The notes under the pieces are model-generated. The model ran no database searches. It worked only from the letters and a program-made list of their open reading frames with translations, and had not been told where the DNA came from. A DNA stretch of 40,002 nt from Octopus bimaculoides (taxonomy: Eukaryota): the NCBI RefSeq assembly GCF_001194135.2, contig NC_069005.1:7863434-7903435 (forward strand), written 5' to 3'. The translations under genes and the position numbers were made by a program. Of this stretch, positions 2,221 to 21,809 are shown one piece after another (positions within the stretch are counted from its first letter, which is position 1; each line of letters starts with the position of its first letter).

Positions 2221-3780
2221 AGTATATATATAAATGCATACACACGCACATAATTATCAGCCTGCTGTTCTGCTTTTGGTCTTTCCACTTATCTTGGAGT
2301 CAATGATGCTATTCTGCCTCCCTTTCCCCAGCCAGTTTTGGGGGCCTTAAAAAAGAGCCATGCATACTAGACTTTCTCTTCTGCCTTCATCACAAAAAAG
2401 CAACAACTCATCTAAGTTTTTACAAGTATTTATTAATTTAACAATGTGGTTAGGAATAATATGTTTAGATTAATGTTCCCCCATCATCAAGTATGTCAAC
2501 AGTTTCAAAAGCTATAAATGAATAATAACTTTGTAACTGTATTTAAGAACTCTTGTAAACAAAACAGTGGTAAAAAGATAACTGGAGTGGAAATGTAGTG
2601 GAGATTGAGTTGGAAGAACTAAAGGGTTGTCAGTGGTTAGATAAGACCTAAACAAAACAAAAAAGATGATTATCTAATAACTACTTTTGTTTTTTTAACC
2701 CCAGGTCAACCTGTCTTTTTAAATAAAATTTATCTCAAACTACATTACATTGCATTTAACCGTTTTGTTACCATGTTTATGGTGAAATATACTGCCTTTC
2801 ATCATCATCATCATCATCGTTTAACGTCCGCTTTCCATGGTAGCATGGGTTGGACGACTTGACTGAGGACTGGTGAACCAGGCTCCAATCTGATTTGGCA
2901 GAGTTTCTACAGCTGGATGCCCTTCCTAACACCAACCACTCCAAGAGTGTAGTATATATATGTATATGTATATATATATATGTATATATATATGTATATA
3001 TATACATACATATATGTATATATATATATATANNNNNNNNNNNNNNNNNNNNNNNNNNNNNNNNNNNNNNNNNNNNNNNNNNNNNNNNNNNNNNNNNNNN
3101 NNNNNNNNNNNNNNNNNNNNNNNNNNNNNNNNNNNNNNNNNNNNNNNNNNNNNNNNNNNNNNNNNNNNNNNNNNNNNNNNNNNNNNNNNNNNNNNNNNNN
3201 NNNNNNNNNNNNNNNNNNNNNNNNNNNNNNNNNNNNNNNNNNNNNNNNNNNNNNNNNNNNNNNNNNNNNNNNNNNNNNNNNNNNNNNNNNNNNNNNNNNN
3301 NNNNNNNNNNNNNNNNNNNNNNNNNNNNNNNNNNNNNNNNNNNNNNNNNNNNNNNNNNNNNNNNNNNNNNNNNNNNNNNNNGTGGTGGGGTAGATAGATA
3401 GATATAAATATTATTTAAAATAGTTTGATTTGGCTCCATGTATTTAAACTGCCTTTGTTTCAATTAAATTTGAAAGTAATGAAGAATTTATTAAATTAAC
3501 TTCGTTATTATTAAACTGGAGTCTGGAATACAAATTAACATGAAATTTTGATGGAGGTTTTAATTTAGACCATTTTAAAACAGTGAATTTGTATCAGAGT
3601 ACCAAGGGTGGTTTCAGGCAGGATGGTATCAAAAAGGGTTAACATGTCACTTCCTTTTTCATTTTTTTTTGACAATAGGAATGTATTATTTGAAAGAGAT
3701 TTAAATGCTTTTTCAAGCAAGCTGAGTAACAACATAGAAGCTATTTCATTAACTTGTAATGCTTCTGTCATACAAAGTTG

Positions 3781-4031
3781 TCACTTTTGTATTGAATCCA
3801 TGTCAGAATTAGTTGGCTGTTTAGGTTTTGAAATATCTTGGACTTGTTCGGTTTTGTAACTTGCATTAGAGACATCATTCCGGGGCTCAACATCACTTGT
3901 TACTAAGATGTCTTTCGCAATACATTCATTCATCAATCCACTGGCATATAGTCTTCTTTCTTTTGCTTCATCAGCTTCCTGCCACATTTGCAGCGGGGAG
4001 GAATGAATCTCAGAACTCAATTCTTCATTAC
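3781..4031 (-). CDS. DIABLO: DIABLO-like terminal coding exon 5
   Basis: Acceptor ttcttttatattttcaaag|. Phase-1 continuation (G)NEELSSEIHSSPLQMWQEADEAKERR...SIQK, with TGA at 3783-3781. Confidence 0.82.
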
Positions 4032-7000
4032 CTTTGAAAATATAAAAGAAAATTCAATTTAAATAGCTACCATTTGTTAAGGTTATCACTACAGATAAGC
4101 AATGAGTTCATGGACGGTTAATGGGTTGGATGGGTGGTGATTAAGGAGCAAAAACACCTGAAATATGTCATATACACCCATTTCTCATTTTTTATCTTTG
4201 ATCTCACCAGATATTGGTTTCAAATTTTGGCACAAGGCCAGTAAGTTTGGGGGAGGGAGTAAGTCAATTATATCAACCCCAGTGTTCATCTGGTACTTAT
4301 TTTATCGACCCCAAAGGATGAAAGGCAAAGCTAACCTCAGTAGAATTTGAACTCAGAATATAAAGAGCAACCAGATATTGGTTTCAAATTTTGGCACAAG
4401 GCCAGTAAGTTTGGGGGAAGGGATAAATCAATTATATCGACCAGAGTGTTCATCTGGTACTTATTTTATCGACCCCAAAGGATGAAAGGCAAAGCTAACC
4501 TCAGTAGAATTTGAATTGAATTTCATCCATAAAAATAGATGAAATGCCACGAAGCATTTTGCCCGATATGCTAACAATTCTGCCAGCTCACTGCCTTTAA
4601 CCAATTTGTCTTCCAACTCTGCCAGTCCCACATCTTAGTTTTGATACAACAACGAGCATATGACTGCACTAACCTGACATAAAGGCAACTTCCGCTAACT
4701 GCATGATTAGCCTGTCCATACTGCTTAAAACCATTTGTAATTTCTGAAGAAGATAAAGAAAGTTAGAGGAAAAATCACTTAAAATACCATATATTTACAA
4801 AGTGAGTGAATTTGGTAGAAGGAAGCGTGGGGGTTGTAAATGAACAGCATTGTCATACAATGACGGTGATGATATATATATATATTCACCACTTAAAAGT
4901 GCATATTGTGTTAGAACTCACAAATACTGTAATATTTACCAAGAGAGAAAAACTCTCATATTTCCTTACCTGGATTTTGTCTTTGCAATCATTTATTTCT
5001 GTTCGAGTGTCAATGATGAGACACCATAATCTTTCCCCTTCTTCATCAAGGCGGCCTACAAATTTCATATAGTCAGAGTAATAATTTATGAGTTTATAGA
5101 TGAGCTGCAAAAAAAAAAAAAATAAATGTATTATTAAATAAGAATGTTCGTGAAAGATCACAACGATTATGAATATAGAATGACATAAATTTTTAATAAT
5201 TCCGCCAAATTGACTTTGCCTTTCATCCTTTTGGGGTCAATAANNNNNNNNNNNNNNNNNNNNNNNNNNNNNNNNNNNNNNNNNNNNNNNNNNNNNNNNN
5301 NNNNNNNNNNNNNNNNNNNNNNNNNNNNNNNNNNNNNNNNNNNNNNNNNNNNNNNNNNNNNNNNNNNNNNNNNNNNNNNNNNNNNNNNNNNNNNNNNNNN
5401 NNNNNNNNNNNNNNNNNNNNNNNNNNNNNNNNNNNNNNNNNNNNNNNNNNNNNNNNNNNNNNNNNNNNNNNNNNNNNNNNNNNNNNNNNNNNNNNNNNNN
5501 NNNNNNNNNNNNNNNNNNNNNNNNNNNNNNNNNNNNNNNNNNNNNNNNNNNGCTTTGTTTATATTTCACAACTATGAAACAAAAACGTATGTAACAATTT
5601 GTCAGTCACCCCACCCCCAACCCGTTTTTCGGACCACAAAAAGGGTTTGGTAATTTTTCTCCTATGCAGATCTCTAATGCAACATTTAAAAAATGAGTCA
5701 ATAAGTGAAAATAACCAATAAACTGATTCCTTATGGGATTTCCCAATCAAATTGCCAGCAAACCATTTTCAGCCAAACCAATTTCAACGGATTTCGCTCA
5801 AATCTGATGTCGATGTTACTTATTTTGGTTTGAAATAAAGCACTTAATCATTTAATAATCCTAGCTTAATCCCTAGCAGCGCCGGGTTATACTGCTAGTT
5901 ATTATTAATATTAAATTTTACTTCTCAGAGTTCTTAATATTACTTGCTCTAGTTAATTCTGTGAGAGTGGACAGCAGCCTGTTGTCAAAGGTCTCATAGG
6001 GTCTCTGAAGGTCTTTGTCCACGAATCATAAGACTTAATATGTAGATGTTAAGATACTCAACACCGAGGTACCAATCCCAAAATCCTAGCTGCCGCAAAT
6101 AGAGCAGATTTTGGGCATGTTCTGCCCACATGTCAATTCCAGTTTCTTAGACATATTTCTTGAACTTGGTCCTTATAACTACTGGGATGACAGGCACTCT
6201 CTTTATTGCCCACATTCTTGCAAATTTCTTCCGTTAGTAACTTGTATTTTTCTACCTTTTCCAGCATTTAGTCACCTATGTGTGCATCCCTGGTTATAGC
6301 AATAATCTTTTTGTCACCTATTTGTGTGTGTCCCAATAGAGTAAATACTAGTTTAGTACTGGGATTGCAAGCATCATAGAATAAATACCAGGTTTACAAA
6401 AAATGTACTGGGGTTGGTTTCTTCAACTAAGCCCTTCAAAGTGAATGCACAGCATGAGCAGAGTCCTGTAACTGAGACAAATGAAAATATTAAAAAAAAA
6501 AACAGGAATGTAATAACTGTCAATGGAAGTCTAAGACAGGAAGGATAGTGTGTGAGAAGAGGTTAGGAATAGATAAAGAGAGGTAGGGAGGGAAAGAGAG
6601 AGAGAGAGAGAGAGAAAGAGAGACAGACAGATAAGAGAGAAAGGGAGAGACAGATGAGAAAAAAGAGAGAGACTGATGAAAGAGAGAAAGAGAGCAAAAA
6701 GAGAAAAGAAAGGTAGAGGGAGAGAGATAGACCAGTGAGAGAGAGAAAGAGAAAGAGGCAGATGAGAAAGAAAGAGAGCAAGAGAAGAATAAGGAGATAG
6801 ATAAGCAGAGGGAGGAAGGAAGGCAGAGAGAAAGGATTATGGGCGCTTACTTGTGTGCATTCATTTTCGGTTTTTACCAGGATACCAAGTGTGACTTCAT
6901 ATAGAGTTGTTGTAGCATCTTTGGTCTTCAAAAATTCATTATCAAAGTCTGGGATGCCGGATAAAGGGATCTATATGAATGAAAGAAAGAAAGAAAGAAA

Positions 7001-10000
7001 GAAGGAGAAAGAGAATAGGAAATTGTGAATTGTACTTCAAAGTATAGCAGGTGATATGAACACATACACTAAACATCAACAGAACACAAACTACTGGGTT
7101 GGCCAAAAAGCCTGTTTGGTTTTTATGATAATAAACTTGAAACATTCTAAAAAGTAGCTTAAAATTTAAGATGTTTATGTCAATGTTAGCCCTAATCCAG
7201 CAGACTTATGGTCAAAGAGGTTCCAGCAAAAACTATTTGATTTGCTTTTTGCTTTTGTTTTCAGAAATAGTATATCTGACTACATAATGCAGTGAATATG
7301 GTATTGATACGATCAGTTGCCATTTCTCTGTAGAAGTGTCCCACACTCCATGAGAGAAATTCGTTCGGGAAATGTAGGCATCTTCGATTATGGATTGGGG
7401 CAGTGCTACTCAAAGTGGTGGTCCGCGGACCGGTGCCGGTCAGCGAGCCATCAGCTACCGGTACGCGGCGAGTTTCCAGAAAAGAAAGAAACATTATAAA
7501 ATCCTTATGTAATATTGTATTATTTGTTAACAAAATAAATATAAGGTAAAAGATATTGTCAACTTTTATTATATTCATTATATATATTAGAAATAATACA
7601 TTTCTAAACCTCTCAGAGAGACTTAAGCAGTAGTGATGCGATAAAGTAGTTGTATACTGCCGGCTTAACGTGACAGTCTCAATAAGGGAATATACTACTG
7701 CTATTTAGCCCTAGGAAGCTGGACCGCTTCCTGTCGGCCTTGACACATTGGTCCAGCTTCCTAGGGCTAAATAGCAGTAGTATATTCCCTTATTGGGACT
7801 ATAAGTTAAGTTGGCAGTATACAACTACTTTATTATATATATTGTTTCCGGTATAAATTAATATTACTAAGAAATATTACCGGTTTGTGTCACATTGGAG
7901 TGGGGAGTGCCGGTACACCACATCATATAGTTTGAGAAGCACTGGATTAGAGAACGATAAGAAAACTGAACCCCCCTTCGACAACAGCTGAACCGCGTAT
8001 CGACGAGGGGAGGCTACTCTTCCTTCGATCTTAGAAAAGGGTTTGTTTCCTCCGCACCACCCTAAAGAAGTAGCAGAGAAGTCGGAAAGAAAAATAATTA
8101 TTTATCGAACGCTGAAAAAAGCGACAAGAAAAGTAGAAATAGCAGGCGTTGAAGAGATAGAGGAATGTTTAAAGGAAGTAACGACATTCTATTACAGAGG
8201 ACGAACGTTTGGCGCGGTGTAGGTGCGTTTCGTTAATGAGAACGAAGTAAAGAAGAAGTACTCCACCGTGGCCTTGAAATCGGCACAGTGGGCACTCTTA
8301 CCTACTTACTCTGACAGACGCACAGCCAGAGTAAGGATAGGGAGAGTGCCACCTGGAATTAACGAGGATTGGCTTGTGGCAGCCATCCTCTACAATACAG
8401 AGGAGAAAGCAGAGATNNNNNNNNNNNNNNNNNNNNNNNNNNNNNNNNNNNNNNNNNNNNNNNNNNNNNNNNNNNNNNNNNNNNNNNNNNNNNNNNNNNN
8501 NNNNNNNNNNNNNNNNNNNNNNNNNNNNNNNNNNNNNNNNNNNNNNNNNNNNNNNNNNNNNNNNNNNNNNNNNNNNNNNNNNNNNNNNNNNNNNNNNNNN
8601 NNNNNNNNNNNNNNNNNNNNNNNNNNNNNNNNNNNNNNNNNNNNNNNNNNNNNNNNNNNNNNNNNNNNNNNNNNNNNNNNNNNNNNNNNNNNNNNNNNNN
8701 NNNNNNNNNNNNNNNNNNNNNNNNNNNNNNNNNNNNNNNNNNNNNNNNNNNNNNNNNNNNNNNNNNNNNNNNNNNNNNNNNNNNNNNNNNNNNNNNNNNN
8801 NNNNNNNNNNNNNNNNNNNNNNNNNNNNNNNNNNNNNNNNNNNNNNNNNNNNNNNNNNNNNNNNNNNNNNNNNNNNNNNNNNNNNNNNNNNNNNNNNNNN
8901 NNNNNNNNNNNNNNNNNNNNNNNNNNNNNNNNNNNNNNNNNNNNNNNNNNNNNNNNNNNNNNNNNNNNNNNNNNNNNNNNNNNNNNNNNNNNNNNNNNNN
9001 NNNNNNNNNNNNNNNNNNNNNNNNNNNNNNNNNNNNNNNNNNNNNNNNNNNNNNNNNNNNNNNNNNNNNNNNNNNNNNNNNNNNNNNNNNNNNNNNNNNN
9101 NNNNNCCGAAATATATATATTTTTTAAAAATCACTGCAATAATAATAATAATGATAATAATAATAATAATAAATCATTCTTTTATTTACTACAGGGACGA
9201 CTAGCATTTGAGGAAGGATTTGTGGCGAGTAATCTGTAATTATAGGACTGAGATAATAGAGATTTCAAATTACCCGCCGGTAATTTGAATGGCGGGTAAT
9301 TTGAAATTGCTACATCGGTGTTACAGTCCCAAGGCTTTAAACACAGAATTTCTCCGTTGAAAGGTATTCAAGTTTTACAAGTACTGAGTTTTTTTGTTTT
9401 TAGAATGGATAAAGTTCTTTTTTATTCTCTTACATAAAGGGTACACATACTTGATTACATAAATAAAACACATCCAAAACCGAAGGATATACAAACATGA
9501 ACGAAGGTAGAAAGAGGAAGAAAACACATCATATCAACGAGTGTCCCAATCGATAATACATTACAAAGTTCAACGGAACGTACTGAAGCAAGACAACACG
9601 TTCGCAGCATTACCACGGGCGAGGCTAAGGCGTTGGAAAAGCCAAGCACCCTCACGAGTATCGTCTGACAGCTCGGTGAAGCGAGCCGTCAATGATAAGA
9701 ACTTCGTCGTTAGCGGCCCTGCCCGTCCAAACGTTTCAAAGGCCACAGGCTGGAAGAAATGGTTCACTGACAAGTCCTGATACTTAAGGATTTCGTTCTG
9801 TTAGACTACAGAAGCAGTGACCCTCCCATTTACCGCAGCATCCAGAATTTGGGAGAGAGCAAAAGAGACACTGACGTCCAGATGAGGGCGCCTACCTCTT
9901 ACCCAGGGACAAAAGGTAAGACCATCTGGTCTCTTCCCGTCACTTCTGGATAATCCCGCCGACTCTAGAACTGAGGGGATATTAATCCGAGCTAGGGCCC

Positions 10001-12003
10001 GCTTAATGATTAAGTTTATATCAGTGTAACGAGCGAAACGACCAGTATTTATTTAGGCAGCAAGACACGCCATGAAGGTCTGTGGAATCGAGGGGCCTAC
10101 CACAGCGACATCTTAATTCTCCACAAATGTCGGCTCCCACTCTGGATATAATGGAGGTGCGGAGCTCATCCACACTGAGTAGACCATCAATGTTGGCCAC
10201 AGGCAGAGCATCGATCAGTCCCCCAGGAATTTCGCACTTGCAGAATAAAATTACATTTCCTTGTACCCGAGGAAAAGTGAATTGGATTGATAAACGACTG
10301 AAGTGGGTAGGGCACAGAGTAAGATTTGACTTTGAGGAAAAATTTTTTTTTCCAAATGCTCACTATCTTACAAAAATTATATCAGCTAAGCAAATGACCG
10401 TCTCTAAAGCATTAAAAACGCTATAACATATTCAGAATACTATTTCAGAAAATTATCACCGTTCTTTTTGAGCCTATAGAAGACAAATTTAACTGGGGCA
10501 AAATGAGTAAGTCAAGAGAAGGCAAATTTGCCTCTTGAATACTCCAGAATTACATTTGAAAAAAAACTCATACACATCAATGTTCATCCCTAAACATCAG
10601 AAAGATCAGAAATGCAGCAAAAATTTGAAATATCTAAGTTAAATGAAAGGGTCATGGAAAATGGCACACGATATAAAATTGACAAAACTCGACTAAATCT
10701 AAAAACGCTATATAAAATATTTTCTATAGCTTCGTCACGATCTGCTGTAGCAGTCCTCTTCCTGTTATATTTACGGACCATACATTTAAAGAAAACAAAT
10801 TATTGAAATTACTTATTACTCATTTTGCCCCAGTTTAGATAAATTTTTTTTGAAAATGATCAAATTAGACATTAGTGTGGGGGAAAATTGACTTGGAATC
10901 CAAGAGAGAAAAGAATATCGATTGTTAATCACCATAAGTTATCCAGATATTTTACTGGCAACTTCAATTACATGTGAGTCAAAGTTGAGGAAAGATTCCT
11001 TGAAAAAGAAATAATGTACTTGTGACCTGACTGTTTCAATCTTTTTCAGCTTCAACAACTTTGTTGATCAATTTTTACTCCCAAAGATGATGCAACAGTA
11101 CGAAATGATGCTTCAATACTTGCAATGTATTGGTCTCAAATAAATAGGGAAAAAATAATGAAAAATCAGAAATTGCTCATTTTGCCCCACTTACAAATTC
11201 TACCCCCACCCCCGCCGCTACTAATGAGCAGCCGGATAGAGTGAAGGGGGTGGGGAATAATACACAGCATAGGTGCAGGAGTGGGTGTGTGGTAAGTTAC
11301 TTGCTTACCAACCACATGGTTCCGGGTTCAATCCCACTGCGTGGCATCTTGGGCAAGTGTCTTCTACTATAGTCTCGGGCCGACCAAAGCCTTGTGAGTG
11401 GATTTGGTAGACGGAAACTGAAAGAAGCCCGTCGTATATATGTATATATATATATGTGTGTGTGTGTGTCTGTATTTGTCCCCCCAACATCGCTTGACAA
11501 CCGATGCTAGTGTGTTTACGTCCCCGTAACTTAGCGGTTCGGCAAAAGAGACCGATAGAATAAGTACTAGGCTAAACAAAGAATAAGTCCTGGGGTCGAT
11601 TAGTTCGACTAAAGGCGGTGCTCCAGTATGGCCACAGTCAAATGACTGAAACAAGTAAAAGAGTAAAGAGAGCAGGATATTGGACTTGATGATAGGTGGT
11701 AACGGAGAGCTGAATGAAGTTGATAATGTGTAATAACCGTGATAGCCTAATCTCAAGTAGAAATAAACAAGAGACAAAAGAGGCCGGTTCTCTGAAAACT
11801 ATCCTCAGTCAAAACAAACCCTTTATTTTGGAACTCACCGGTGTGTTGATGTCACATTGCTCAATATCAACGTGCAGGGTGCTCCGGAGTCGAACCACGG
11901 TAGACGTACCCAAAACTAACCGGAGAGTTTGACTACGGATTAACGGCACACACCTACGAGACACGAAGCTGAACACTTTGGACAATCTAAAGGCAGCTGC
12001 CAT
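3781..12003 (-). CDS. DIABLO: Smac/DIABLO homologue (mitochondrial IAP-antagonist family), 5 coding exons, 246 aa
   Basis: Exons 12003-11839 (165 nt), 6970-6851 (120), 5104-4970 (135), 4743-4674 (70) and 4031-3781 (251). All introns are GT-AG with compatible phases (0,0,0,1), and the total of 741 nt is open. Protein: MAAAFRLSKVFSFVSRRCVPLIRSQTLRLVLGTSTVVRLRSTLHVDIEQCDINTP|IPLSGIPDFDNEFLKTKDATTTLYEVTLGILVKTENECTQ|LIYKLINYYSDYMKFVGRLDEEGERLWCLIIDTRTEINDCKDKIQ|KLQMVLSSMDRLIMQLAEVAFMSG|NEELSSEIH...DMDSIQK*. By eye it aligns with human DIABLO as recalled ([61 protein letters not shown]...AAEAAYQTG). Confidence 0.85.
4674..4743 (-). CDS. DIABLO: DIABLO-like exon 4 (70 nt, phase 0/1)
   Basis: Acceptor ttctttatcttcttcag| and donor TCAG|GTTAGT. 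Encodes KLQMVLSSMDRLIMQLAEVAFMS(G). Confidence 0.88.
4970..5104 (-). CDS. DIABLO: DIABLO-like exon 3 (45 codons, phase 0/0)
   Basis: Acceptor poly-T-gcag| and donor CAG|GTAAGG. Encodes LIYKL...GRLDEEGERLWCLIIDTRTE...KDKIQ, the most recognisable Smac segment. Confidence 0.88.
5895..6290 (-). mobile_element. Degenerate R4/Dong-like 3' fragment in DIABLO intron 2
   Basis: Remnants of VPVIPVV...AARILG and an AT-rich tail; similar in type to 17795-18190. Confidence 0.5.
6560..6835. repeat. Degenerate (AG)n/(GA)n purine tract at the 5' end of DIABLO intron 2
   Basis: Directly visible; begins about 15 nt downstream of the exon 2 donor in transcript orientation. Confidence 0.95.
6851..6970 (-). CDS. 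DIABLO: DIABLO-like exon 2 (40 codons, phase 0/0)
   Basis: Pyrimidine-rich acceptor ctttctttcattcatatag| and donor CAA|GTAAGC. Encodes IPLSGIPDF...KTENECTQ. Confidence 0.8.
7401..7944. mobile_element. hAT-type MITE
   Basis: Termini cagtgctactcaaa / tttgagaagcactg. The 8-bp flanks gattgggg and gattagag match at 6/8. Confidence 0.75.
7641..7833. repeat. Foldback inverted repeat, ~85-bp arms and 24-nt loop, nested in the hAT MITE
   Basis: Arm 7641-7725 is nearly the exact reverse complement of 7750-7833. Confidence 0.92.
8040..8416 (+). mobile_element. Probable LINE ORF1 (RRM-like) fragment running into an assembly gap
   Basis: Reads ...RKVEIAGVEEIEECLKEV...GAV*VRF...RRTARVRIGRVPPGINEDWL, with a stop, resembling non-LTR ORF1 proteins. 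Clade not assignable. Confidence 0.5.
9550..10230 (-). mobile_element. CRE-like (RLE-type) non-LTR retrotransposon 3' fragment
   Basis: Contains the Cys/His segment RCRCG...HGVSC, then INLIIKRALARINIPSVLE..GLSRSDGKRPDGLTFCPW, then FQPVAFETFG...REGAWLFQRLSLA-RGNAA. Frameshifted. Confidence 0.85.
10491..10835 (-). mobile_element. Pogo/Tigger-like MITE (345 bp) retaining the transposase start
   Basis: Perfect 20-bp TIRs aactggggcaaaatgagtaa (10491-10510) and ttactcattttgccccagtt (10816-10835). The minus ORF from 10781, MVRKYNRKRTATADRDEAIENI, resembles pogo HTH-psq transposase N-termini. Confidence 0.75.
11275..11671 (+). mobile_element. SINE family B copy, 170 bp into DIABLO intron 1 (antisense)
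   Basis: Same sequence as 1833-2220. Confidence 0.9.
11839..12003 (-). CDS. DIABLO: DIABLO-like exon 1: mitochondrial targeting presequence
   Basis: ATG in a good context (gtaATGG on the minus strand). The first ~40 aa are Arg/Ser/Leu-rich and contain no acidic residue. The exon ends CCG|GTGAGT (phase 0). The ORF-track start at 12045 is TTG, not ATG. Confidence 0.8.
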
Positions 12004-12313
12004 TACTTCGTTTCTTACAAGACTTTGATCAAGGAAAGACGACAATGCCGAGCAGACATTTTCACAAATAAAGTCACTTCACAGATTCGTACTTTACGTT
12101 TTTTTTTTTTTCAAATATATTTTGAGTATCATTTTTAAATTATGAAAGTATAAAGAAACGTTGTTATATTTCATTTGTCTTTTTTTTAATTTTATATTTC
12201 TAGCAAAACAAAATCCCAAATATTTCTTTAGACAAGTTTTCCAATAAATACGGAACTAGATGCGACTCAGCTTATACTTACAGCAAAGTCTGTTGTGACT
12301 GCCAGCTGATAAC
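12004..12313. promoter_or_regulatory. Putative bidirectional promoter plus both 5' UTRs between the DIABLO-like and PCYOX genes
   Basis: Only 310 nt separate the two divergent ATGs, so both TSSs probably lie in or overlap this interval unless there are unseen upstream non-coding exons. No specific core motif is claimed. Confidence 0.7.
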
Positions 12314-12395
12314 ATGTCGAAGTTGCTCCTGTCAATCACATTGCTTCTCTACCTAGGCTTTGTATTGGGTTTTGACGAAGAATTACCTAGAATCG
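12314..12395 (+). CDS. PCYOX1: PCYOX exon 1: signal peptide
   Basis: aacATG. Encodes MSKLLLSITLLLYLGFVLGFDEELPRI, a hydrophobic signal peptide. Donor G|GTAAGT joins in frame to exon 2 to give PRI-A-IVGAG. Confidence 0.9.
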
Positions 12396-15300
12396 GTAAG
12401 TTTACTTGACAATTTACAATTACAATAGTAATTTTTTTCCCCTCCTGCTTTCTCAGTCAACAGACGTTTCGTGTCAAGACATGCTTGTTTATTCTTTTTG
12501 GTGGGAGTAAGTTCATTCGTATTCATTTATACACAACATGCACGCAATAGAGAGCCCGTGTGCTGTTACTAGACAGGTTAAAATTAAGGAAGGGATACAT
12601 TGGATAACGGTGGTCATGCATATCCCTAGTCAGATGGGATGGTCATTGCTAGAATGCTTTTAAACATTAGTTTGCTCAGTCATCGGTAATCTGGGACTAA
12701 ACAACTTCAATAACATACTGTGTTCGAAACCACGAAGGAGCCTCCGCCAGTTAGAAATCGTAGCCAGTCGCACTCAAATTATATCCTATTCGCTTAAAAA
12801 AAAAAAAAGGCGCACATTCGCAAGAAGAAAACAAAACCAGACGGACACATTGGATAATGAAGTCCAATATACACCGTCTAAAAAAACGGGATGGCCACGG
12901 ACGGAATGTTTTTGTCGTAGGGGTGCTGACTAGGCTTGTCCTGCAGTTTGACAACAGTCACAACAAATAATGGAGTTCGATTCTGTTCAGTTTCTATTCT
13001 AACATCAACAGGTGCGTGACATCTGTTGCTGTCAAGTGTTTCCCTTTTGGGAGGGAACTTTTACGTGGTCGCTCGATTTGCGAGAAACAATAGCTAAATC
13101 TCTATAAATTCACATTGTCTACACTTTGAGAAAAGAGCACGTTGGATAATGCAGCCCTGGTAGATCTAACAACTAAATCTCCTTCGTTCCAACAAAAGAA
13201 GGACACGTCGACTATTGTAGATTTGTACACATACCGGCTTTGAGTAAAACAAAACCGAAAGGAACAGCTTTGAATATTGTGTCTGAAGAAAAAAATAAAT
13301 AAATAAAATAAAGATAGCCGAAGCTGAAATGTTCAGCCAGAGTCGCCCTGATGTCAACAACATATGCTTGCCCCCTCATGTTCACCACTCTACATTATTG
13401 ATAAAGTAGGCGCAAAATTACCCAAAGTAGTGAACCTGGAAATTTTGATAAAAATGCCGTGGCTTATCTATATGAAGTACATTTAGTACCCACTTAGCTT
13501 ATAATTTTTCGTACAACAGGCGAAAGCGTACTTTTGTTTTTTTTCTTCAGTCGTTCTAATTTGTGTAAGATCCTTCTTTACGTTCCATAGGCTCGGGCGT
13601 GGCTTTGTTGCTTCCCGACCACATGGTTCCGACTTCAGTCCCGCTGCAAGGTACCTTGGACAAGTGTCTTCTACTATAGCCCCTGGGGTTAGCGTGCATT
13701 TTTTTCCATATTCGTTCGCTACACATCATTTTACACCCATTACACTATTTTTTTTTCTTTCAGTTTTGTGACCGGTTGTTAAAGTTAGGTTATCGGATCG
13801 TGTGAATTTTCCGAGTTCTCTCCTCACCCCACCCCGTTCGTCAGCGCGCATTTTTTTGTTTTCATAAATTCGTTTACTACACATTATTTTACACCTCTTA
13901 CACTTTTTAAAAAATTTNNNNNNNNNNNNNNNNNNNNNNNNNNNNNNNNNNNNNNNNNNNNNNNNNNNNNNNNNNNNNNNNNNNNNNNNNNNNNNNNNNN
14001 NNNNNNNNNNNNNNNNNNNNNNNNNNNNNNNNNNNNNNNNNNNNNNNNNNNNNNNNNNNNNNNNNNNNNNNNNNNNNNNNNNNNNNNNNNNNNNNNNNNN
14101 NNNNNNNNNNNNNNNNNNNNNNNNNNNNNNNNNNNNNNNNNNNNNNNNNNNNNNNNNNNNNNNNNNNNNNNNNNNNNNNNNNNNNNNNNNNNNNNNNNNN
14201 NNNNNNNNNNNNNNNNNNNNNNNNNNNNNNNNNNNNNNNNNNNNNNNNNNNNNNNNNNNNNNNNNNNNNNNNNNNNNNNNNNNNNNNNNNNNNNNNNNNN
14301 NNNNNNNNNNNNNNNNNNNNNNNNNNNNNNNNNNNNNNNNNNNNNNNNNNNNNNNNNNNNNNNNNNNNNNNNNNNNNNNNNNNNNNNNNNNNNNNNNNNN
14401 NNNNNNNNNNNNNNNNNNNNNNNNNNNNNNNNNNNNNNNNNNNNNNNNNNNNNNNNNNNNNNNNNNNNNNNNNNNNNNNNNNNNNNNNNNNNNNNNNNNN
14501 NNNNNNNNNNNNNNNNNNNNNNNNNNNNNNNNNNNNNNNNNNNNNNNNNNNNNNNNNNNNNNNNCGATGTTGGTGTGTTTATGTACCGTAAGCTAGCAGT
14601 TCGGCAAAAGAGACCGATAGAATAAGTAGTAGGCTTACAAAGAATAAGTCCTGGGGTCGATTTGTTCAACTAATGGTGATACTCCAGCATGGCTGCAGTC
14701 AAATGACTGAAACAAATAAAGGAATAGTCCCCGTTGTGGTCCACCCACTTCTTCCATCGGTGTTGCAGTATTAGGATCCCATTAGTAAAGAAGTTTTCAT
14801 TTTGTTGGTTTAAAAAGTCATCAACAGCAGATGTGACGTCAGCACTGCGATGCTGGTTCCCAGTTAAGTGTTTTTTTTCCATGTCAGGAAACAGATAGTA
14901 TTGAGATAGGGCCAAATCAGGAGAATAGGGAGGGTAATCAGCAAGTTCAAAGCCACAGTCATGCACAGCAGCCATTGAAACTAAGGACTTGTGTGCTGGA
15001 TTATTGACCTGATAAAGCAAGACCCCTGTTGTCAGTTTTCCTGGGCGTTTAGATTTGATAACTTTTCATAACTGCCTGAACAAGTTGGCATGTACTTTCC
15101 ATTGGTGGTGTGGCTCTTTTGAAGATAGTCAATAAACACAAAAAATTCCCTGCAGATAAAATGACCTTGGCCTTCTTTGGTGCAGGTAAAGAAGGGTGTT
15201 TCTACTGTATGAATGTAGCCCTTTAAGGCTAAACCCTTTTTCTACAAGTACTTGATAACACCACAGTGCCAAATTTTGTCGAGGAGCCTGGTGTAGCCAC

Positions 15301-18300
15301 CTGGTTCACCAGTCCTCAGTCAAATCGTCCAACCCATGCCAGCATGGAAAGCGGACGTTATACGATGATGATGAAGTCACTTCTAGTTACTTTTGAAGTT
15401 TTCTTTAAATAGTCAGATGTCAGTTTACCTGGAAAGAAACAATGCAGTTATTAATAAGATGGGTTGAAATTAATGCATGCAAGATTTCACAGCACTAGCA
15501 CCACTCCTTCATAGTCAGCTTATGAACTTTTCAGCCTACCCCTGTGTATATATATCATCATTATCATTGTCTTTTATGCATGCATTGGTAAGACAGTTGA
15601 CAGGAGCCAGCCAGGAAGAAGACTACCCCCAGGTGTCTGTTTGGCAGAGGTTTTGCAGCTGGATGCCCTTCCTAATACCAAATCTCTCCACAGAGTGGAC
15701 TAAGTGCTTTTACATGACACCAGCACAGGTGATGTCAGTTTTGGCATGATTCTTACAGCTGGATGCCATTCCAAATGCCAACCACTTTACAGTGTGGACT
15801 GGATTCTTTTTACTTGGTACCAGCAGGATAACCAAGTAACTTGCAAGACAAGGAATTTTGAGAGGGGAAGGGATCTTGTGTTAGATGATGGCAAAGGTTG
15901 AACGCTTTGATATGATCTGACAAGCTCCAGGACTGCGTTGAGCTCCAATGCCATTGTTTCTGCAAGTGGTTGCCCTTCCTAATGCCAACCACTTTACAGG
16001 GTATACTGGGTGCTTTTCAAGCCACTGGCACTTAAAAATTTAAAAGAAAAGGAAAATGTCCCTTCAACTAAGTGGGGTTAGTATTTAAGAGAAGATGACA
16101 GCTTTAAGTTGAGAGGCTGAAATATGATAGGGAGACAGGCACAGGTGTCTATCTTTCTCTCTCTCTCTCTGTACAGAGGCAGTACAATGCTACCCTGAAT
16201 TATATAAGGGTGGGTGGGAGTAGCTTGAAAGAAGATAAAGATGGTAGTGATGGTGTACGAAAGTGAACTCTCAAGGTACAAAAAGGTGAGCATGTGCGAG
16301 GATACAGACAGTAGATGGGGCGGGGGAAGAGATGGTAAGTAGCTTCATAAGACTGTGTGGGAGAGTAGCAGATAGTGAGAGATTAGGTAAAGGTGAATGT
16401 AGTGTGTGATGTATCTGTAGAATGCTCAGTTGGCCCCATATCTATGAAGCTGTTATGTAATCTAATTGAATGAACTGAAATACATTTTCTTGAAACTGAT
16501 GGTGGATCTGTTTATTTTTACTTTATATGGATTAGAATACACCCTCATTCACCTAATGTCAAAACATTTTCTCTTTCTCTCACCACACACATGTGTATGT
16601 TGATGCAAACTGGAAAAATAGACCTCAAAATATGAGCATATGTACATTTTAATTAATATTTAGCAGAAGTAACAGTGACTCAAAGTAATGTCAGAAGAAA
16701 TGCCACTAAGCATCATGCCCAATGTGCAAATGATCGTGCCAGTTTGTTGCTCTGATGGGAGATCTAATAATCGTATTTGTCTGTGTGTCATTCAAGCTAA
16801 AACTATCAAAAGGGGAGCACAACAACAAACCTTGAAAGATAAAAGCTTGATATAATATCTATTGTTAATAAATCTTAACCAGAGTAAAGTTCTTTTTCCT
16901 TATTAACGTGGTTCTATCGGCAGAATCAGAAATAGCATTGGACAAAAATGCCTTGTGATATTTAATCACTTCATTCTATGTACAGAGTTCAAATCCCGCA
17001 TTGATTTCATCTTTCTGGAGTTGATAAAGTACTAGTAATATACTGGGATCTATTTTATTGATAAACCCTTTCCCCAAATTTCTGTCTTTGTGTTTATATT
17101 AGGAACAATTATAATAATAATAATATTAATAATAATAGTAATAATAATAATATTAATAATAATGAAATTATTGTGTATAGTGTTCAGGTGCACTACAACT
17201 CACCAAAGGTGCATGTACAGTAAATAGAATTATGTATGAAAGTCAGGATAGTAAATGGTGTATGAGTCATGATATACATGTGTGTATGTGTATGGACAGG
17301 GTGAGTGGATATCAGGTGTAGTGTTGGCGAATTTCAGGAAGCATGGAGGTTTTAAAGGATGCAGTGTCTCGGCAACTAACAACTGATGCAGGTGGTTTAT
17401 TCCATGCTTCAGTGAGTGTGAAAAAAATGTTTATGAAAGTCACAGGAGCTGTGCTGTTTTCTGACTTTATAGGCATGCCCACATTTGTTAGACTCATGGA
17501 GTTCAAAAAGGTGTTCAAGGTAGTTGTTGGCATGATGGTTTATAATTTTGTGGGTGTTTACTAAGTCAGTTGCCAGACATCGGAACTTCAATGTATCTAT
17601 GCCTTGAAGCTCCAACGTCTGGTAACTGACTTAGTAAACACCCAGTTAATTTTACTTATGCTGTAAAGGTTGATATTATATTTCATTCTTTCAGGGTTTT
17701 AGAAAATAATTACCAGTAGAGCACTGGGGGGTCAGTATTATCGGCTTCCCTGCTTCCTTCAAAATTGCCAGCCTTGTCCTAAAATTTGAAACCATTATTG
17801 TTATTATTTGATGAAAACTCTCAACTTATTTTGCTGGGTATGATGGAAAGTGTCAGCTGTCCACAGCCAGCAGACTAAGGTGACACTTGTTTATTGGTCA
17901 TGCTTCAAGGACTCTGAGAAGAATTCTTGCAGTTCCAAGCAATGCTGGTTTTTGTAAGCGTTGTATCTTTACATTTGTATCATTCTTTCTGATCCATGTT
18001 GGTAGCTGAGTGCTGATACTTCCAAGTGCACCAATTACTATTGCTATCATATCTACTCTCATTGACCACAGCCTTCATATTTCCCAATTCATCGTAGTTG
18101 TTCAGTTTTTCTTCTTTCTCTTTGATCCTGTTGTCACCAGGACACGCTATGTCAATTATCATGCAAGTTCTTTCATTTTTATATACCATATTATTATTAT
18201 TAAGGTGTGAAGGCTTGTGGCATAGTGGTTTTTTAATTTATGCTTGTTTTTCTTAATTGATTAATTAATTTAAAAAAAAAATAATAGTGGGAATTTCGCT

Positions 18301-21300
18301 GTTTAATACTCTGTTTTCCTCTTCAATTCTTGTTTCAGCAATAGTTGGTGCTGGCATTGGAGGCACATCAACAGCTTACTACCTACGTCAACTGTTTGGG
18401 GACCAAGCTGTCATAGATATATATGAATCCAATAAAGTTGGCGGACGTTTGGACTCTTTCGAATTTGATGGAGAATCCATTGAAACCGGTGGCAGCACAC
18501 TTCATCCAAAAAATGCTTACATGCTGAATTTTACAAAGATTTTAGGTAAGGGGTTTAATTTTACTTATTCCATTTGTGATTGTAAATGTAGGGTTGTTGT
18601 TTAACCCCTTAAGTCAGCCCTATTGAAGGAGACCAACACTTAGCCCTTTAGCATTTAGATTATTCTATCAAATGTAATGCTTATGTACTCTCATTGTTTT
18701 AAATTAATCGGGTATCATTTTGCAACTTCAATGCATCAATGATATGATTGTTTATTTTTAGAAAGGAGATGGCCAACTAGATAAGACAATGGGATCACTT
18801 GCTTAGAGGTTGTGAGCTCAAATCCACAGCAGTTGTTTCATTGCTTCTCTTAATATACTATTCTTGTACTTCATTGTACAACAGCTTCTTTGGATAGTCA
18901 TTCTGTTGACAAAATTTGTAAAATAGGTACACTTTTGAAGTTTGTTAGTTTCGAATATATTCCACATTGATTTTGCCTCATCTCTTGAACTTAGCTGTAG
19001 ATTTGAAAATATTTCTGCTTGCCAGGCTTGGAAGCAAAACAGCTTGAAAGCAATGGATTTGGAATATATGATGGCAAAGAGTTTCTGTTTAAAACCAGTA
19101 GTTACAAAATTATAACCATCCTGAAAGCTTTCTGGCGTTATGGAAATGATCTGCAGAGAATTGCAAATTGGATTGACGATTTGATTACCAAAAAATTTTG
19201 CCGGTAAGTTAAAAAAAATTTTTTTTTATTTCAGTGCTTTTTTTTTTGCACATTTTTTTACTGAAGGATTCAAATATAATCGCTCAAAATTTCATTAGCC
19301 TTAACTTTGGAAAGCAGTTTTGTATATCAATCTATCTTTTGTTGAGGAATGTTATGTTTGAAGCTATTTTTTATTGAGATATGTCGAGTTTACTGAGGCA
19401 ATGTGATTTGCAGAAAATACCAATTCCATTTTTTGATAGATATTTAACATCATTACTAGAATAACCATTAGATTTAATTTCACAGTGAAAAGGCTAAAAT
19501 TTGTTAATTACAACATTAAGAGAATAAGTAATGTCATCAATGTCATAATCAACTTCGTTAGTGTAATCATCTTCATTATTGTTGCTATCATTAGTTAATC
19601 CTTTTAAACACAGGAATCAGATATAACCAATCAAAATTTCATTACCCTTAACTGCAGAAAGCAGTTTTATATCCCAATCTATCTTTTGTTGAAGAATGTC
19701 GTGTTTGAAACTATTTTCTGTCTGGATCCAGTCTTCAAATGCAAAAATAGGCAAACCCTAACTTAGCAAGCATTATATACTAGTTGGCTGTTCCTGTTTA
19801 AAGGTTAAAGAAAATTTAGCTACTATTTTTTAGGACCTTGAAAGACTGCATAGGGAGTCATTGCTCCAGTATGTTTCTTATTCTGCTTGCTAATATTCAG
19901 TTTTCTATCGCTCAACCAGGATCTACAATCATCAATTGAAAGGGTATGCCTTTACCACTGTGAAAGATCTGCTGTTATCCATGGACCAATTAATGCTAAA
20001 CTTAACCACCAGACCTTTAGAAGAAACTCTGAAAGAAATGGGCTTTTCTGACCGCTTTATTGCAGAGCCTGTTACTGTGGCTGTCCGAACAAATTATGGC
20101 CAGACAGTCAATATTCAATCATTTGCTGGTGAGTACTTAACACAGAAAACAATCGGGAAGCTGTTCTATGATTGGCTTTGTTTTTCTTACTTTTCATTTT
20201 TCTAGTTTTTTTCAAATTTTTAATGTTTGACACCAAACAACCTGAGGCTGCCCTTGGTCCTATGCCCTAAATTTCCTGTTTTAAAGTGATCTAAATTAAA
20301 ACCTTGCATCAATATTTATTAATTAATATTCCATATTTCAGTTTAATTATTTATGGCAATGTTTGCTCTGCTTGAGAAGACATGTCCAACTAAGTAAAAC
20401 TGTGGCTGTCCATATGTACAAGTATGTCCTCTACATCCCTCTCTCAGCTGAGAGGCCTTTCCCTTGAGGGCTTGTGGGTGATGGTGTCATGTAAAAAGCA
20501 CTTGTGCTGGTACCACATAAAAGCAGCTGTGCTGGTGTTACACAAAAGTGCTGATGCCATGTAAAAGCACCCATGCCAGTGCCACGTAGAAGTACCATGT
20601 AAAAGTACCCATGCTGGTGCCACGTTGAAGCACCCGTGCTGGTACCACGTAAAAGGCCCTGTCCCAGTGTCACATAAAACTCGCACGCACACACTCACTT
20701 GAGCGACACTCGCACGCACACACTCACTCGAGCAACACTTGCGCACACACTCACTTGAGCGACACTCGCACACACACTTACTCGAGCAACACTCGCTCAC
20801 ACAACATTCACTGACTCACTCAGGATTTTGTCAGATCCCCCCCACTCATTCACATGATGCTTGCTCACTCTGAGAACACTCATACACCATTTACTCACTC
20901 CAACACAACACATACAGGCATTGTGCGTGTGTGTGTGTGTGTGTATGTGTATGTGTGTGTGTGTGTGCTTACAACACTCCAGCACATTTTTTTATCTTTA
21001 ACTTTGTAACATTTCTCAAACTATATTTTACCGTTACAGGGTCTATCTCACTGGCAGGTATGCAACCTGGTTTGTTTGCCATAAAGGGTGGAAACAAGCA
21101 GGTGGCCGAAAAACTATTAACAGAGTCTAAAGCAAATTTTATTCACGCCGAATTAAAAAAAATCTCACTGTTAAAGGAACACGATTCAATACAATATGAA
21201 TTATTCTATAAACCCCACAACTCGACCGAAAAAAACTCCATGCAAAATCATATATACGATATTGTCATAATTGCTATGCCACTCAATCAGGATAGCAAGG

Positions 21301-21809
21301 ATATTAAATTTGAAGGATTTATATCACCATTATCCTACAGCCAACCTTTTTACCGAACTGTGGCCACATTCATTCAAGGAGAGGTAAACGCCTCGTTTTT
21401 TGATTTTGAAAAAGAAGGCGACCTGCCGAATAGTATTTTGATTAACGCAGAACCATACTTCATAAATTCCATTTCAAAGAAACGAAAGAACCTCTGGAAG
21501 GTATTCTCCCGGGAACTGCTAACCGAAAGCGAGAAAAATCTGTTGTTCAAAACCATTGAGAAAACGACCGTCTATAACTGGGTAGCCTACCCTGCTTACA
21601 GCTCCTCTCAGAAGTTACTTCCCTTTGTTCTACACGACCAACTCTACTATGTGAACGCTATCGAAAGTGCTGCTTCTACGATCGAGACCAGTGTAATCGC
21701 TGCTAGAAACGTGGCACTGCTTGTCAAAAACCATTGGTTCAATCTCTTTGATTATATCGATGAAATACCAAATGAATCAGAGGAAAATAAAATAAAAGGA
21801 GAATTGTAG
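12314..21809 (+). CDS. PCYOX1: Prenylcysteine oxidase / lyase (PCYOX1/PCYOX1L co-orthologue), 5 coding exons, 481 aa
   Basis: Exons 12314-12395, 18339-18545, 19026-19203, 19920-20128 and 21040-21809, all GT-AG with phases 1,1,2,1; 1446 nt open. Family motifs: PRIAIVGAGIGGTSTAYYL (FAD-binding), VGGRL, IETGGSTLHPKN, GIYDG, RIYNHQ, RTNYGQ, GGNKQV, YDIVIIAMPL, WKVFS, WVAYP, LYYVNAIESAAS. C-terminus KGEL. Confidence 0.95.
14722..15215 (-). mobile_element. Degenerate mariner transposase C-terminal fragment
   Basis: Translates YPPYSPDLALSQYYLFPDMEKKHL...LQHRWKKWVDHNGDY, matching the mariner YSPDLAP-x-D motif and C-terminus. Confidence 0.85.
17110..17625 (-). mobile_element. CR1/L2-like LINE 3' end
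   Basis: Translates LKFRCLATDLVNTHKII...GHAYKVRKQ...KHFF...WNKPP.SVV...FK, the typical CR1/L2 RT C-terminus. A (TAA)n repeat lies at about 17110-17165. Confidence 0.8.
17795..18190 (-). mobile_element. R4/Dong-like non-LTR 3' end in PCYOX intron 1
   Basis: Translates IIDIACPGDNRIKEKEEK..Y, then IVIGALG...LQKPALLGTARIL, followed by a short (TAA/CAA)n tail. Confidence 0.8.
18339..18545 (+). CDS. PCYOX1: PCYOX exon 2 (FAD-binding GxGxxG)
   Basis: Acceptor ttcttgtttcag| and donor TTAG|GTAAGG. Encodes AIVGAGIGG...MLNFTKIL. Confidence 0.96.
19026..19203 (+). CDS. PCYOX1: PCYOX exon 3
   Basis: Acceptor tttctgcttgccag| and donor CG|GTAAGT. Encodes GLEAKQLES...GIYDGKEF...WRYG...KKFCR. Confidence 0.95.
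19920..20128 (+). CDS. PCYOX1: PCYOX exon 4
   Basis: Acceptor ctcaaccag| and donor GCTG|GTGAGT. Encodes RIYNHQLKGYAF...RTNYGQTVNIQSFAG. Confidence 0.95.
20490..20802. repeat. Two adjacent minisatellites in PCYOX intron 4
   Basis: Degenerate ~26-nt unit (gtaaaagcacccatgctggtgccac-like) at 20490-20680, followed by about 4 copies of a 29-nt unit (ctcgcacgcacacactcacttgagcgaca) at 20681-20802. Confidence 0.85.
21040..21809 (+). CDS. PCYOX1: PCYOX terminal exon 5
   Basis: Acceptor ttttaccgttacag|. Encodes GSISLAG...GGNKQV...ESAAS...KIKGEL, with TAG at 21807-21809. Confidence 0.96.

What the first reader, a model, noticed from the sequence alone, without database searches (positions are those of the whole stretch)
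3781..12003. Hidden five-exon cephalopod Smac/DIABLO homologue
Sequence: five small minus-strand exons with canonical splice sites join into one open 246-aa frame, with a mitochondrial-type presequence and a helical body. Established: vertebrate Smac/DIABLO is released from mitochondria and antagonises IAPs, while Drosophila uses the unrelated RHG proteins. Inference: the motifs GRLDEEGERLWCLIIDTRTE (human [21 protein letters not shown]) and LAEVAFMSG (human AAEAAYQTG), plus the MAA..LS..SF...CVP start, make this an orthologue. I recall bivalve Smac homologues being reported, so the family may not be new to molluscs. Such a divergent gene could still be unannotated or mislabelled in octopus.
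Basis: partly seen in the sequence, partly recalled or inferred. Interest (0 to 1): 0.8.

Follow-up and report, generated by a model that had tools for sequence, protein, structure and literature searches.

The report
Already-annotated octopus Smac/DIABLO gene
The five exons are real and encode the Octopus bimaculoides homologue of the mitochondrial cell-death protein Smac/DIABLO, but the gene is already in the public annotation, so it is ordinary; its one oddity is that it lacks the usual four-residue motif that binds IAP (inhibitor of apoptosis) proteins.

Summary
**Observation confirmed.** Five minus-strand exons (12003-11839, 6970-6851, 5104-4970, 4743-4674, 4031-3781) have GT/AG splice sites and join into a 741-nt, 246-aa frame.

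**Gaps.** Both assembly gaps lie inside introns. The gapless O. sinensis locus has the same five exons and splice sites (dN/dS 0.17).

**Identity.**
- Pfam Smac_DIABLO scores 43.6 bits against a cut-off of 25.
- The best solved-structure matches are all human Smac.
- The AlphaFold model is a three-helix bundle whose top 11 Foldseek hits are Smac (TM 0.84).

**Not hidden.** The exact 246-aa protein is RefSeq XP_014789768.1 ("uncharacterized protein LOC106883317") and UniProt A0A0L8FHI7 ("Direct IAP-binding protein with low pI"). Homologues are annotated across gastropods and bivalves. A squid Diablo transcript was published in 2022.

**One open point.** The canonical Ala-initiated IAP-binding motif (AVPI) is absent.
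- No alanine occurs between residues 5 and 73.
- The three alignments place AVPI against TSTV, HVDI or NTPI.
- The hydrophobic sorting segment reads RLRSTL instead of GLGxTL.

IAP antagonism is therefore inferred from homology only.

**Verdict:** a correct homology call on an already known gene; low interest.

The parts
11839..12003 (-). Exon 1 coding part (ATG 12003-12001; residues 1-55): basic presequence followed by a poorly conserved linker
   Evidence: 165 nt with a GT donor at 11838-11837; 8 K/R and no D/E before residue 46; conserved in O. sinensis with the same donor.
6971..11838 (-). Intron 1. Holds assembly gap 8417-9105, SINE-like copy 11266-11680, a 51-nt inverted repeat at 7675-7800, and a candidate alternative first exon ending ATG|GT at 10935-10931
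   Evidence: The gap corresponds to L002 14591-15889 in the gapless O. sinensis locus, which is repeat copies with no coding match.
6851..6970 (-). Exon 2 (residues 56-95): end of the linker and start of helix 1
   Evidence: AG acceptor, GT donor, 120 nt; conserved in O. sinensis; helix 71-108.
5105..6850 (-). Intron 2. Holds assembly gap 5244-5551 and a CT-rich low-complexity stretch just after the exon 2 donor
   Evidence: The gap corresponds to L002 22077-22925, which holds a SINE-like copy at 22476-22893.
4970..5104 (-). Exon 3 (residues 96-140): end of helix 1, the loop with GRLDEEGERLW, and the start of helix 2
4674..4743 (-). Exon 4 (residues 141-163 plus one base of codon 164): helix 2 with the AEVAFMSG motif
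   Evidence: The 70-nt length means the frame is restored only by joining to exon 5.
4032..4673 (-). Intron 4, with two tandem 146-nt SINE-like copies (4206-4351 and 4370-4515)
   Evidence: copies also occur in L002.
3781..4031 (-). Exon 5 coding part (residues 164-246; stop TGA 3783-3781): helix 3 and a disordered acidic tail

Best explanation
This is the Octopus bimaculoides DIABLO (Smac) gene, LOC106883317, a five-exon nuclear gene that is already annotated.

Shown:
- The gene model.
- Its conservation under purifying selection in a second octopus.
- Its membership of the Smac_DIABLO sequence family.
- A predicted three-helix bundle that superposes on human Smac.

Inferred from sequence features:
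- The first 45 residues (8 K/R, no acidic residue, pI 12 for residues 1-40) act as a mitochondrial presequence.
- After import and cleavage, an acidic (pI about 4.5) helical protein remains. It probably dimerises, because human Phe33 of the dimer interface aligns with Leu78.

Inferred from homology only:
- When the mitochondrial outer membrane is permeabilised, the protein is released and relieves IAP-mediated caspase inhibition.

This last step is the weak one. The octopod proteins have no Ala-initiated IAP-binding tetrapeptide. The hydrophobic sorting and cleavage segment of vertebrate Smac (GLGxTLC|AVPI) is replaced by a charged RLRSTL-HVDI. If the protein binds IAPs, it must use a non-canonical new N-terminus, for example Ser41 after the conserved RLR, or contacts in the helical body.
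For: - Gene model: one search gives 5 exons, canonical sites and a 246-aa frame.
- Existing annotation: searches show the exact sequence equals XP_014789768.1 and UniProt A0A0L8FHI7. Searches show the window is identical to GCA_001194135.2 CM046625.1.
- Family: Pfam PF09057 scores 43.6 bits against a cut-off of 25, E 3.1e-11, with protein residues 73-206 on profile positions 72-206 and no offset. Human Smac chains are the only PDB sequence hits below E 0.1, at E about 4e-7. BLASTP to a primate DIABLO gives E 2e-11 from residue 1.
- Whole-library phmmer returns vertebrate DIABLO and mollusc 'Direct IAP-binding protein' entries.
- Fold: the AlphaFold model has helices 71-108, 116-162 and 166-211 with pLDDT mostly 87-98. 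Foldseek's top 11 hits are all Smac, with TM 0.84 and rmsd 2.0 A over 139 columns.
- Conservation: O. sinensis has the same exons and splice sites, with dN/dS 0.17.
- Presequence features.
- Partners exist: IAP genes are present in both Octopus genomes (PMC8917759).
Against: No Ala occurs between residues 5 and 73 of the O. bimaculoides protein. No processing event in the presequence or linker can therefore expose an Ala-initiated IAP-binding motif. Three alignments place vertebrate AVPI against T33-S34-T35-V36, H44-V45-D46-I47 or N53-T54-P55-I56; none starts with Ala. The most hydrophobic 13-residue stretch of the N-terminal region scores 1.3 on the Kyte-Doolittle scale in octopods. It scores 1.9-2.4 in the vertebrate sequences and 2.2 in a bivalve homologue, so sorting to the intermembrane space is uncertain. 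The structure model used an alignment made mostly of vertebrate DIABLO, so it is not independent of the sequence homology. No expression, localisation or binding data were available here.
Confidence: 0.9

Rival explanations
1. The gene is a true Smac homologue, but in octopods it no longer works as an IBM-type IAP antagonist. The AVPI motif and the hydrophobic sorting signal have been lost. The protein is a mitochondrial, possibly matrix, helical protein with a diverged or additional role.
For: There is no Ala in residues 5-73. AVPI aligns to TSTV, HVDI or NTPI. GLGxTL is replaced by RLRSTL, and hydrophobicity falls to 1.3 from 1.9-2.4. The same holds in Argonauta (HVNI), so it is not an assembly or species artefact. 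A bivalve homologue keeps AVAV and the hydrophobic stretch at the aligned place, which suggests the change happened within molluscs.
Against: The helical body is under purifying selection (dN/dS 0.17). The segment R38-L39-R40-S41-T42-L43-H44-V45 is identical between Octopus and Argonauta, which are only 64% identical overall. That pattern fits a conserved processing site with a functional new N-terminus. The gastropod homologues have Ser-x-Pro/Ala at the aligned place, so a Ser-initiated motif may be the molluscan norm. Binding was not tested.
Confidence: 0.35
2. The 246-aa model is incomplete: an exon carrying the IAP-binding motif lies inside one of the two assembly gaps.
For: Gaps of estimated 308 and 689 nt sit in introns 2 and 1. 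The missing motif would be explained this way.
Against: The gapless O. sinensis locus has only the same five exons, and its annotated product is collinear and also 246 aa. The intervals that correspond to the gaps are repeat copies. Argonauta is collinear across both junctions, with only single-residue indels. The Pfam profile and the protein run in register, 72-206 against 73-206, so nothing is missing in length.
Confidence: 0.03
3. The exon chain is a chance arrangement or a decaying pseudogene.
For: None beyond the low identity to vertebrate DIABLO, about 21-26%.
Against: The frame is intact and all eight splice sites are conserved. dN/dS is 0.17 between two species. Pfam is above its gathering score, and orthologues exist in O. 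sinensis, O. vulgaris and Argonauta.
Confidence: 0.01

Closest known systems
Vertebrate DIABLO/Smac (human structures 1FEW, 1G73, 6JX6)
   Same: - Same Pfam family, PF09057.
- Same three-helix bundle, TM 0.84.
- Basic N-terminal presequence that even starts MAAAF, as in sharks.
- Acidic mature part, pI about 4.5.
- Conserved W122, R129, A160 and G164.
   Different: - Only 21-26% identity.
- No AVPI-type Ala-initiated motif.
- The hydrophobic GLGxTLC segment before the cleavage site is replaced by the charged RLRSTL.
- The C-terminal tail is unrelated and lacks the vertebrate YLRED end.
Other mollusc Smac_DIABLO homologues (Sinanodonta woodiana KAL3841326.1; Babylonia areolata XP_076451156.1 'diablo IAP-binding mitochondrial protein-like'; Lottia, Elysia, Lymnaea, Biomphalaria, Bradybaena)
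   Same: Same family and length class, 19-25% identical to the octopus protein across the helical body. They share the motif AEVAF-x-G. All of them that have a UniProt entry are named 'Direct IAP-binding protein with low pI'.
   Different: The bivalve keeps an Ala-initiated AVAV after a hydrophobic stretch. The gastropods have SLPT, SIPG or SLAG at the aligned place, and the octopods have none of these.
Octopod orthologues (O. sinensis XP_029651085.1, O. vulgaris CAI9740974.1, Argonauta hians GAB1608081.1) and the Euprymna scolopes Diablo transcript (PMC9389742)
   Same: The Octopus orthologues are 95% identical and collinear at 246 aa; Argonauta is 64% identical. All have RLRSTLHV and lack the AVPI motif. 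The squid transcript was called Diablo by the same Pfam model.
   Different: Argonauta has a longer Ser/Asn-rich tail.
Drosophila RHG proteins (Reaper, Hid, Grim, Sickle)
   Same: These are functional analogues only. They antagonise IAPs through an N-terminal A-x-P/A-F/Y motif exposed after Met removal (established knowledge). The octopus precursor happens to start M-AAAF.
   Different: There is no sequence or fold relationship. The MAAAF start is shared with shark DIABLO, which has a normal internal AVPI, so it is an ancestral presequence start and not an RHG-like motif.

Membership tests
Smac_DIABLO homology family (Pfam PF09057) | Score above the curated gathering threshold of the family profile | tested here: met
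   43.6 bits against a cut-off of 25, E 3.1e-11, residues 73-206 on profile positions 72-206 of 237. The public database also carries PF09057 precomputed for this protein.
Smac_DIABLO homology family (Pfam PF09057) | Elongated three-helix bundle like the solved Smac structures | tested here: met
   The AlphaFold model has helices 71-108, 116-162 and 166-211 with pLDDT mostly 87-98. Foldseek ranks 1-11 are all Smac, with TM (target) up to 0.84 and rmsd about 2 A. The model is not independent of the sequence alignment.
Smac_DIABLO homology family (Pfam PF09057) | Best match to DIABLO and to nothing else (reciprocity) | tested here: inconclusive
   The forward direction is clear. The only significant PDB hits are Smac, and the whole-library hits are DIABLO and its mollusc homologues. 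A DIABLO-rich profile returns the two octopod proteins at the top. A reverse search restricted to the octopus proteome could not be run.
Mitochondrial intermembrane-space IAP antagonists of the Smac type | N-terminal mitochondrial presequence | tested here: inconclusive
   The composition fits: 8 K/R and no D/E in residues 1-45, pI 12 for residues 1-40, and a predicted helix at 5-17. No dedicated predictor (MitoFates, TargetP) was available and there is no localisation data.
Mitochondrial intermembrane-space IAP antagonists of the Smac type | Hydrophobic sorting segment directly before the mature N-terminus (vertebrate GLGxTLC) | tested here: not met
   It aligns to the charged V-R-L-R-S-T-L. 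The highest 13-residue hydropathy is 1.3 in octopods against 1.9-2.4 in vertebrates and 2.2 in a bivalve.
Mitochondrial intermembrane-space IAP antagonists of the Smac type | Ala-initiated IAP-binding tetrapeptide (A-V/I/T-P/A-I/V/F) exposed by presequence removal | tested here: not met
   No Ala occurs between residues 5 and 73 in O. bimaculoides. The aligned tetrapeptides are TSTV, HVDI or NTPI depending on the alignment. Argonauta has HVNI.
Mitochondrial intermembrane-space IAP antagonists of the Smac type | Binding to type II BIR domains and relief of caspase inhibition | not testable with these tools
   This needs binding and cell-extract assays. The literature read here shows only that IAP genes exist in Octopus genomes (PMC8917759).
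Mitochondrial intermembrane-space IAP antagonists of the Smac type | Homodimer through helix 1 (human Val26 and Phe33; residues named from memory) | not tested
   In the HMMER alignment human Phe33 pairs with Leu78 and Val26 with Thr71. No multimer prediction was run.

The most novel reading that the evidence does not exclude
Octopod DIABLO orthologues have lost both the Ala-initiated IAP-binding motif and the hydrophobic intermembrane-space sorting signal, which a bivalve homologue still has. Yet the helical body stays under purifying selection. Octopods would then either use a non-canonical new N-terminus, such as Ser41-Thr-Leu-His after the conserved RLR site, or have turned the Smac fold to a function that does not depend on IAPs.
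Probability: 0.3. Interest if true: 0.35.

Novelty: already known. Interest (0 to 1): 0.12.

Why it matters
It matters little as a discovery. The gene model, its Pfam assignment and its UniProt name are public. The family is annotated in gastropods and bivalves, and a squid Diablo transcript has been used in an expression study.

The practical value is small. The NCBI product name 'uncharacterized protein LOC106883317' could be changed to 'diablo IAP-binding mitochondrial protein-like'.

The only point of biological interest is the missing AVPI-type motif in octopods. It bears on how far the vertebrate Smac-IAP mechanism can be carried over to cephalopod apoptosis studies, which at present assume it.

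Tried and rejected
1. **Missing exon in the gaps: rejected.** The gapless O. sinensis locus, collinear orthologues and an in-register Pfam alignment all speak against it.
2. **The precursor's M-AAAF start as a Reaper/Grim-like motif exposed by Met removal: rejected.** Shark DIABLO proteins start MAAAF or MAAVF too and still carry a normal AVPI or AIPI further in.
3. **Wider naming of invertebrate relatives: little gained.**
   - A mixed profile search was swamped by vertebrate DIABLO.
   - An invertebrate-only profile returned only four proteins, probably because low-complexity tails dominated the word filter.
   - Names came from cluster look-ups instead.
   - Squid and nautilus sequences were not obtained.
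4. **Literature: nothing found.** Searches for an octopus DIABLO paper, or for a statement about IAP-binding motifs in invertebrate Smac, found nothing.
5. **Intronic ORFs: no Pfam hit.** The ORFs at 9570-9773, 10021-10200 and 14670-15020 gave no hit at E<=0.01.
6. **One script timed out.** It used fuzzy regular expressions and was replaced by a Hamming scan.
7. **Human sequence from memory.** Database sequences P0020 and P0025 give the same picture.
Full report
**1. The observation**

Reading the minus strand of 3500-12300 and splicing by script gives five exons:

| Exon | Window coordinates | Length (nt) |
|---|---|---|
| 1 | 12003-11839 | 165 |
| 2 | 6970-6851 | 120 |
| 3 | 5104-4970 | 135 |
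| 4 | 4743-4674 | 70 |
| 5 | 4031-3781 | 251 |

- Every acceptor is AG and every donor is GT.
- The exons sum to 741 nt and translate without a stop into 246 aa, ending at TGA 3783-3781.
- The 70-nt exon 4 leaves the frame open only if it is joined to exon 5, so the chain is not a trivial set of in-frame ORFs.

**2. The gaps**

The window has N runs at 5244-5551 and 8417-9105. Both lie inside introns, intron 2 and intron 1 respectively. The nearest coding base is 5104, which is 140 nt from the first gap.

The window is identical to GenBank assembly GCA_001194135.2, record CM046625.1, where the called gene spans exactly the same 8223 bases.

The orthologous locus of Octopus sinensis (L002, from GCA_006345805.1) has no N at all. 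It shows the following:
- tblastn finds only the same five exons as significant matches.
- All AG/GT sites are kept, and the spliced product equals the annotated 246-aa XP_029651085.1.
- The stretches that correspond to the two gaps, L002 14591-15889 and 22077-22925, are occupied by copies of the SINE-like repeats seen elsewhere in the gene.

Two further results agree. Argonauta hians is collinear across both junctions, with only single-residue indels. The Pfam profile runs in register with the protein, profile 72-206 on residues 73-206. A hidden coding exon is therefore very unlikely.

**3. Is it a working gene?**

Between O. bimaculoides and O. sinensis the coding sequence has 21.5 synonymous and 14.5 non-synonymous differences. 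That gives dS 0.151, dN 0.025 and dN/dS 0.17. Exons are 92-95% identical against about 85-89% for introns. This is purifying selection.

**4. What it is**

- Pfam-A gives one hit, PF09057 Smac_DIABLO, at 43.6 bits against a gathering score of 25, E 3.1e-11.
- Against all PDB sequences, the five hits below E 0.1 are all human Smac/DIABLO (E about 4e-7). The next hit is a designed protein at E 0.29.
- BLASTP to a primate DIABLO gives E 2e-11, with the alignment starting at residue 1.
- A HMMER pass over 1.84 billion representatives returns vertebrate DIABLO and a set of invertebrate proteins.
- Cluster look-ups place those invertebrate proteins in Lottia, Elysia, Lymnaea, Biomphalaria, Bradybaena, Babylonia ('diablo IAP-binding mitochondrial protein-like') and the bivalve Sinanodonta.
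- An AlphaFold2 model built from an alignment with vertebrate DIABLO has three long helices (71-108, 116-162, 166-211) at pLDDT mostly 87-98. The N-terminal 70 residues and the tail are disordered.
- Foldseek against the PDB puts Smac entries in ranks 1-11 (6JX6, 8AUW, 1G73, 8E2I, 1FEW, 4TX5), with target TM up to 0.84 and rmsd about 2 A over 139 columns. Nothing else is below E 0.08.

The homology call is therefore sound. The structure model is not independent of the sequence alignment that fed it.

**5. It is not hidden**

The exact 246-aa sequence is already public:
- RefSeq XP_014789768.1, 'uncharacterized protein LOC106883317 isoform X1'.
- UniProt A0A0L8FHI7, 'Direct IAP-binding protein with low pI', with PF09057 precomputed.

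Related entries:
- A second isoform, X2 (XP_014789769.1, 192 aa), is also annotated.
- Orthologues are annotated in O. sinensis, O. vulgaris and Argonauta hians.

Published work already covers the family in molluscs:
- A Diablo transcript of the squid Euprymna scolopes was identified with the same Pfam model (E 3.3e-15) and followed in an expression study (PMC9389742).
- 'Diablo homolog, mitochondrial' is annotated in Crassostrea gigas (PMC8917759).

**6. How it probably works, and where the analogy breaks**

*Presequence.* The first 45 residues carry 8 Lys/Arg and no acidic residue, and residues 1-40 have pI 12. The rest of the protein is acidic, pI about 4.5. This is the usual make-up of a cleavable mitochondrial presequence, so import into mitochondria is a reasonable inference.

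*The missing motif.* Vertebrate Smac acts through the tetrapeptide AVPI, which becomes the N-terminus after the presequence is cut at the end of a hydrophobic segment (established knowledge of the family). In the octopus protein this is not reproduced:
- There is no alanine anywhere between residue 5 and residue 73. No cut in that region can expose an Ala-initiated motif.
- The three alignments disagree on the exact register. AVPI falls on T33-S34-T35-V36, H44-V45-D46-I47, and N53-T54-P55-I56. None starts with Ala.
- In the alignment with 18 vertebrate sequences, the conserved GLGxTLC|AVPI reads RLRSTL-HVDI in Octopus and RLRSTL-HVNI in Argonauta.
- The most hydrophobic 13-residue stretch scores 1.3 in octopods. 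It scores 1.9-2.4 in the vertebrate sequences and 2.2 in the bivalve Sinanodonta, which still has AVAV at the aligned place.
- The gastropod homologues show SLPT, SIPG or SLAG there.

*What is conserved instead.* The stretch R38-L39-R40-S41-T42-L43-H44-V45 is identical between Octopus and Argonauta, although the two proteins are only 64% identical overall. That would fit a conserved processing site with a new N-terminus at or near Ser41, but this is inference.

*Where this leaves the mechanism.*
- I commit to 'mitochondrially imported Smac-fold protein, pro-apoptotic by homology'.
- I put about one chance in three on the reading that octopod DIABLO no longer antagonises IAPs in the canonical way.
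- IAP genes do exist in both Octopus genomes, and they are the least expanded among the molluscs studied (PMC8917759).

**7. An idea tested and dropped**

After Met removal the precursor would start AAAF (ASAY in Argonauta). This looks like the Reaper/Grim motif. However, shark DIABLO proteins also start MAAAF or MAAVF and still have AVPI or AIPI further in. The start is therefore an old feature of the presequence, not a new motif.

**8. Verdict**

The claim of a hidden or new gene is not supported. The feature is already known, and interest is low. The only open question worth a bench test is the absent IAP-binding motif.

Noticed in passing
window 12314-21809 (+): A prenylcysteine lyase/oxidase-like gene (481-aa product; Pfam NAD_binding_8, Amino_oxidase, Prenylcys_lyase) lies head-to-head with the DIABLO gene. 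Its ATG at 12314 is only 310 nt from the DIABLO ATG at 12003, which suggests a shared bidirectional promoter. The same pairing is kept in O. sinensis.
   Followed up: partly
window 10931-10935 (-), in intron 1: Annotated isoform X2 (192 aa) is Met plus exons 2-5, so it lacks the whole presequence. The only ATG|GT(A/G) between 13000 and exon 2 on this strand is at 10935-10931, and it is conserved in O. sinensis. It is a candidate end of the alternative first exon. It would give a non-mitochondrial form. No RNA evidence was available.
   Followed up: partly
window 11266-11680 (-); also 28800-29210, 36762-37446, 39624-39992: A SINE-like repeat of about 400 nt sits in intron 1 and has at least six copies inside the O. 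sinensis DIABLO locus. ORF translations elsewhere in the window share its ...RLPNPLTRLWSAR..RRHLPK.P.SG.EPGTMWLVSK string. Three of the five assembly gaps abut such copies or the TA/CA-rich runs next to them.
   Followed up: partly
window 4206-4351 and 4370-4515, intron 4: Two tandem 146-nt copies (95% identical) of a second short repeat. Further copies occur in the O. sinensis locus.
   Followed up: partly
window 7641-7833, intron 1: A nested inverted repeat: 51-nt arms at 7675-7725 and 7750-7800 (98% complementary, 24 nt apart), inside 29-nt arms at 7641-7669 and 7805-7833 (93%). It looks like a small foldback or MITE-like element, but it was not classified.
   Followed up: no
window 14670-15020 (-), inside an intron of the prenylcysteine lyase-like gene: A 116-aa ORF containing ...YPPYSPDLALSQYYLF... 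resembles, from memory, the C-terminal part of a mariner/Tc1-type transposase. Pfam gave no hit at E<=0.01. It directly adjoins the gap at 13918-14564.
   Followed up: partly
window 9570-10200 (-), intron 1: Two short ORFs (67 and 59 aa, for example ...FQPVAFETFGRAGPLTTKFL...) look like remnants of a mobile-element protein. They gave no Pfam hit. The region is conserved at about 89% in O. sinensis, like the rest of the intron.
   Followed up: partly
window 6560-6850 (-), start of intron 2: About 290 nt of CT-rich low-complexity sequence lies directly after the exon 2 donor. It extends the exon 2 reading frame into a spurious 122-aa Leu/Ser/Phe-rich ORF (6563-6931) that a prokaryote-style ORF caller would report.
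   Followed up: no
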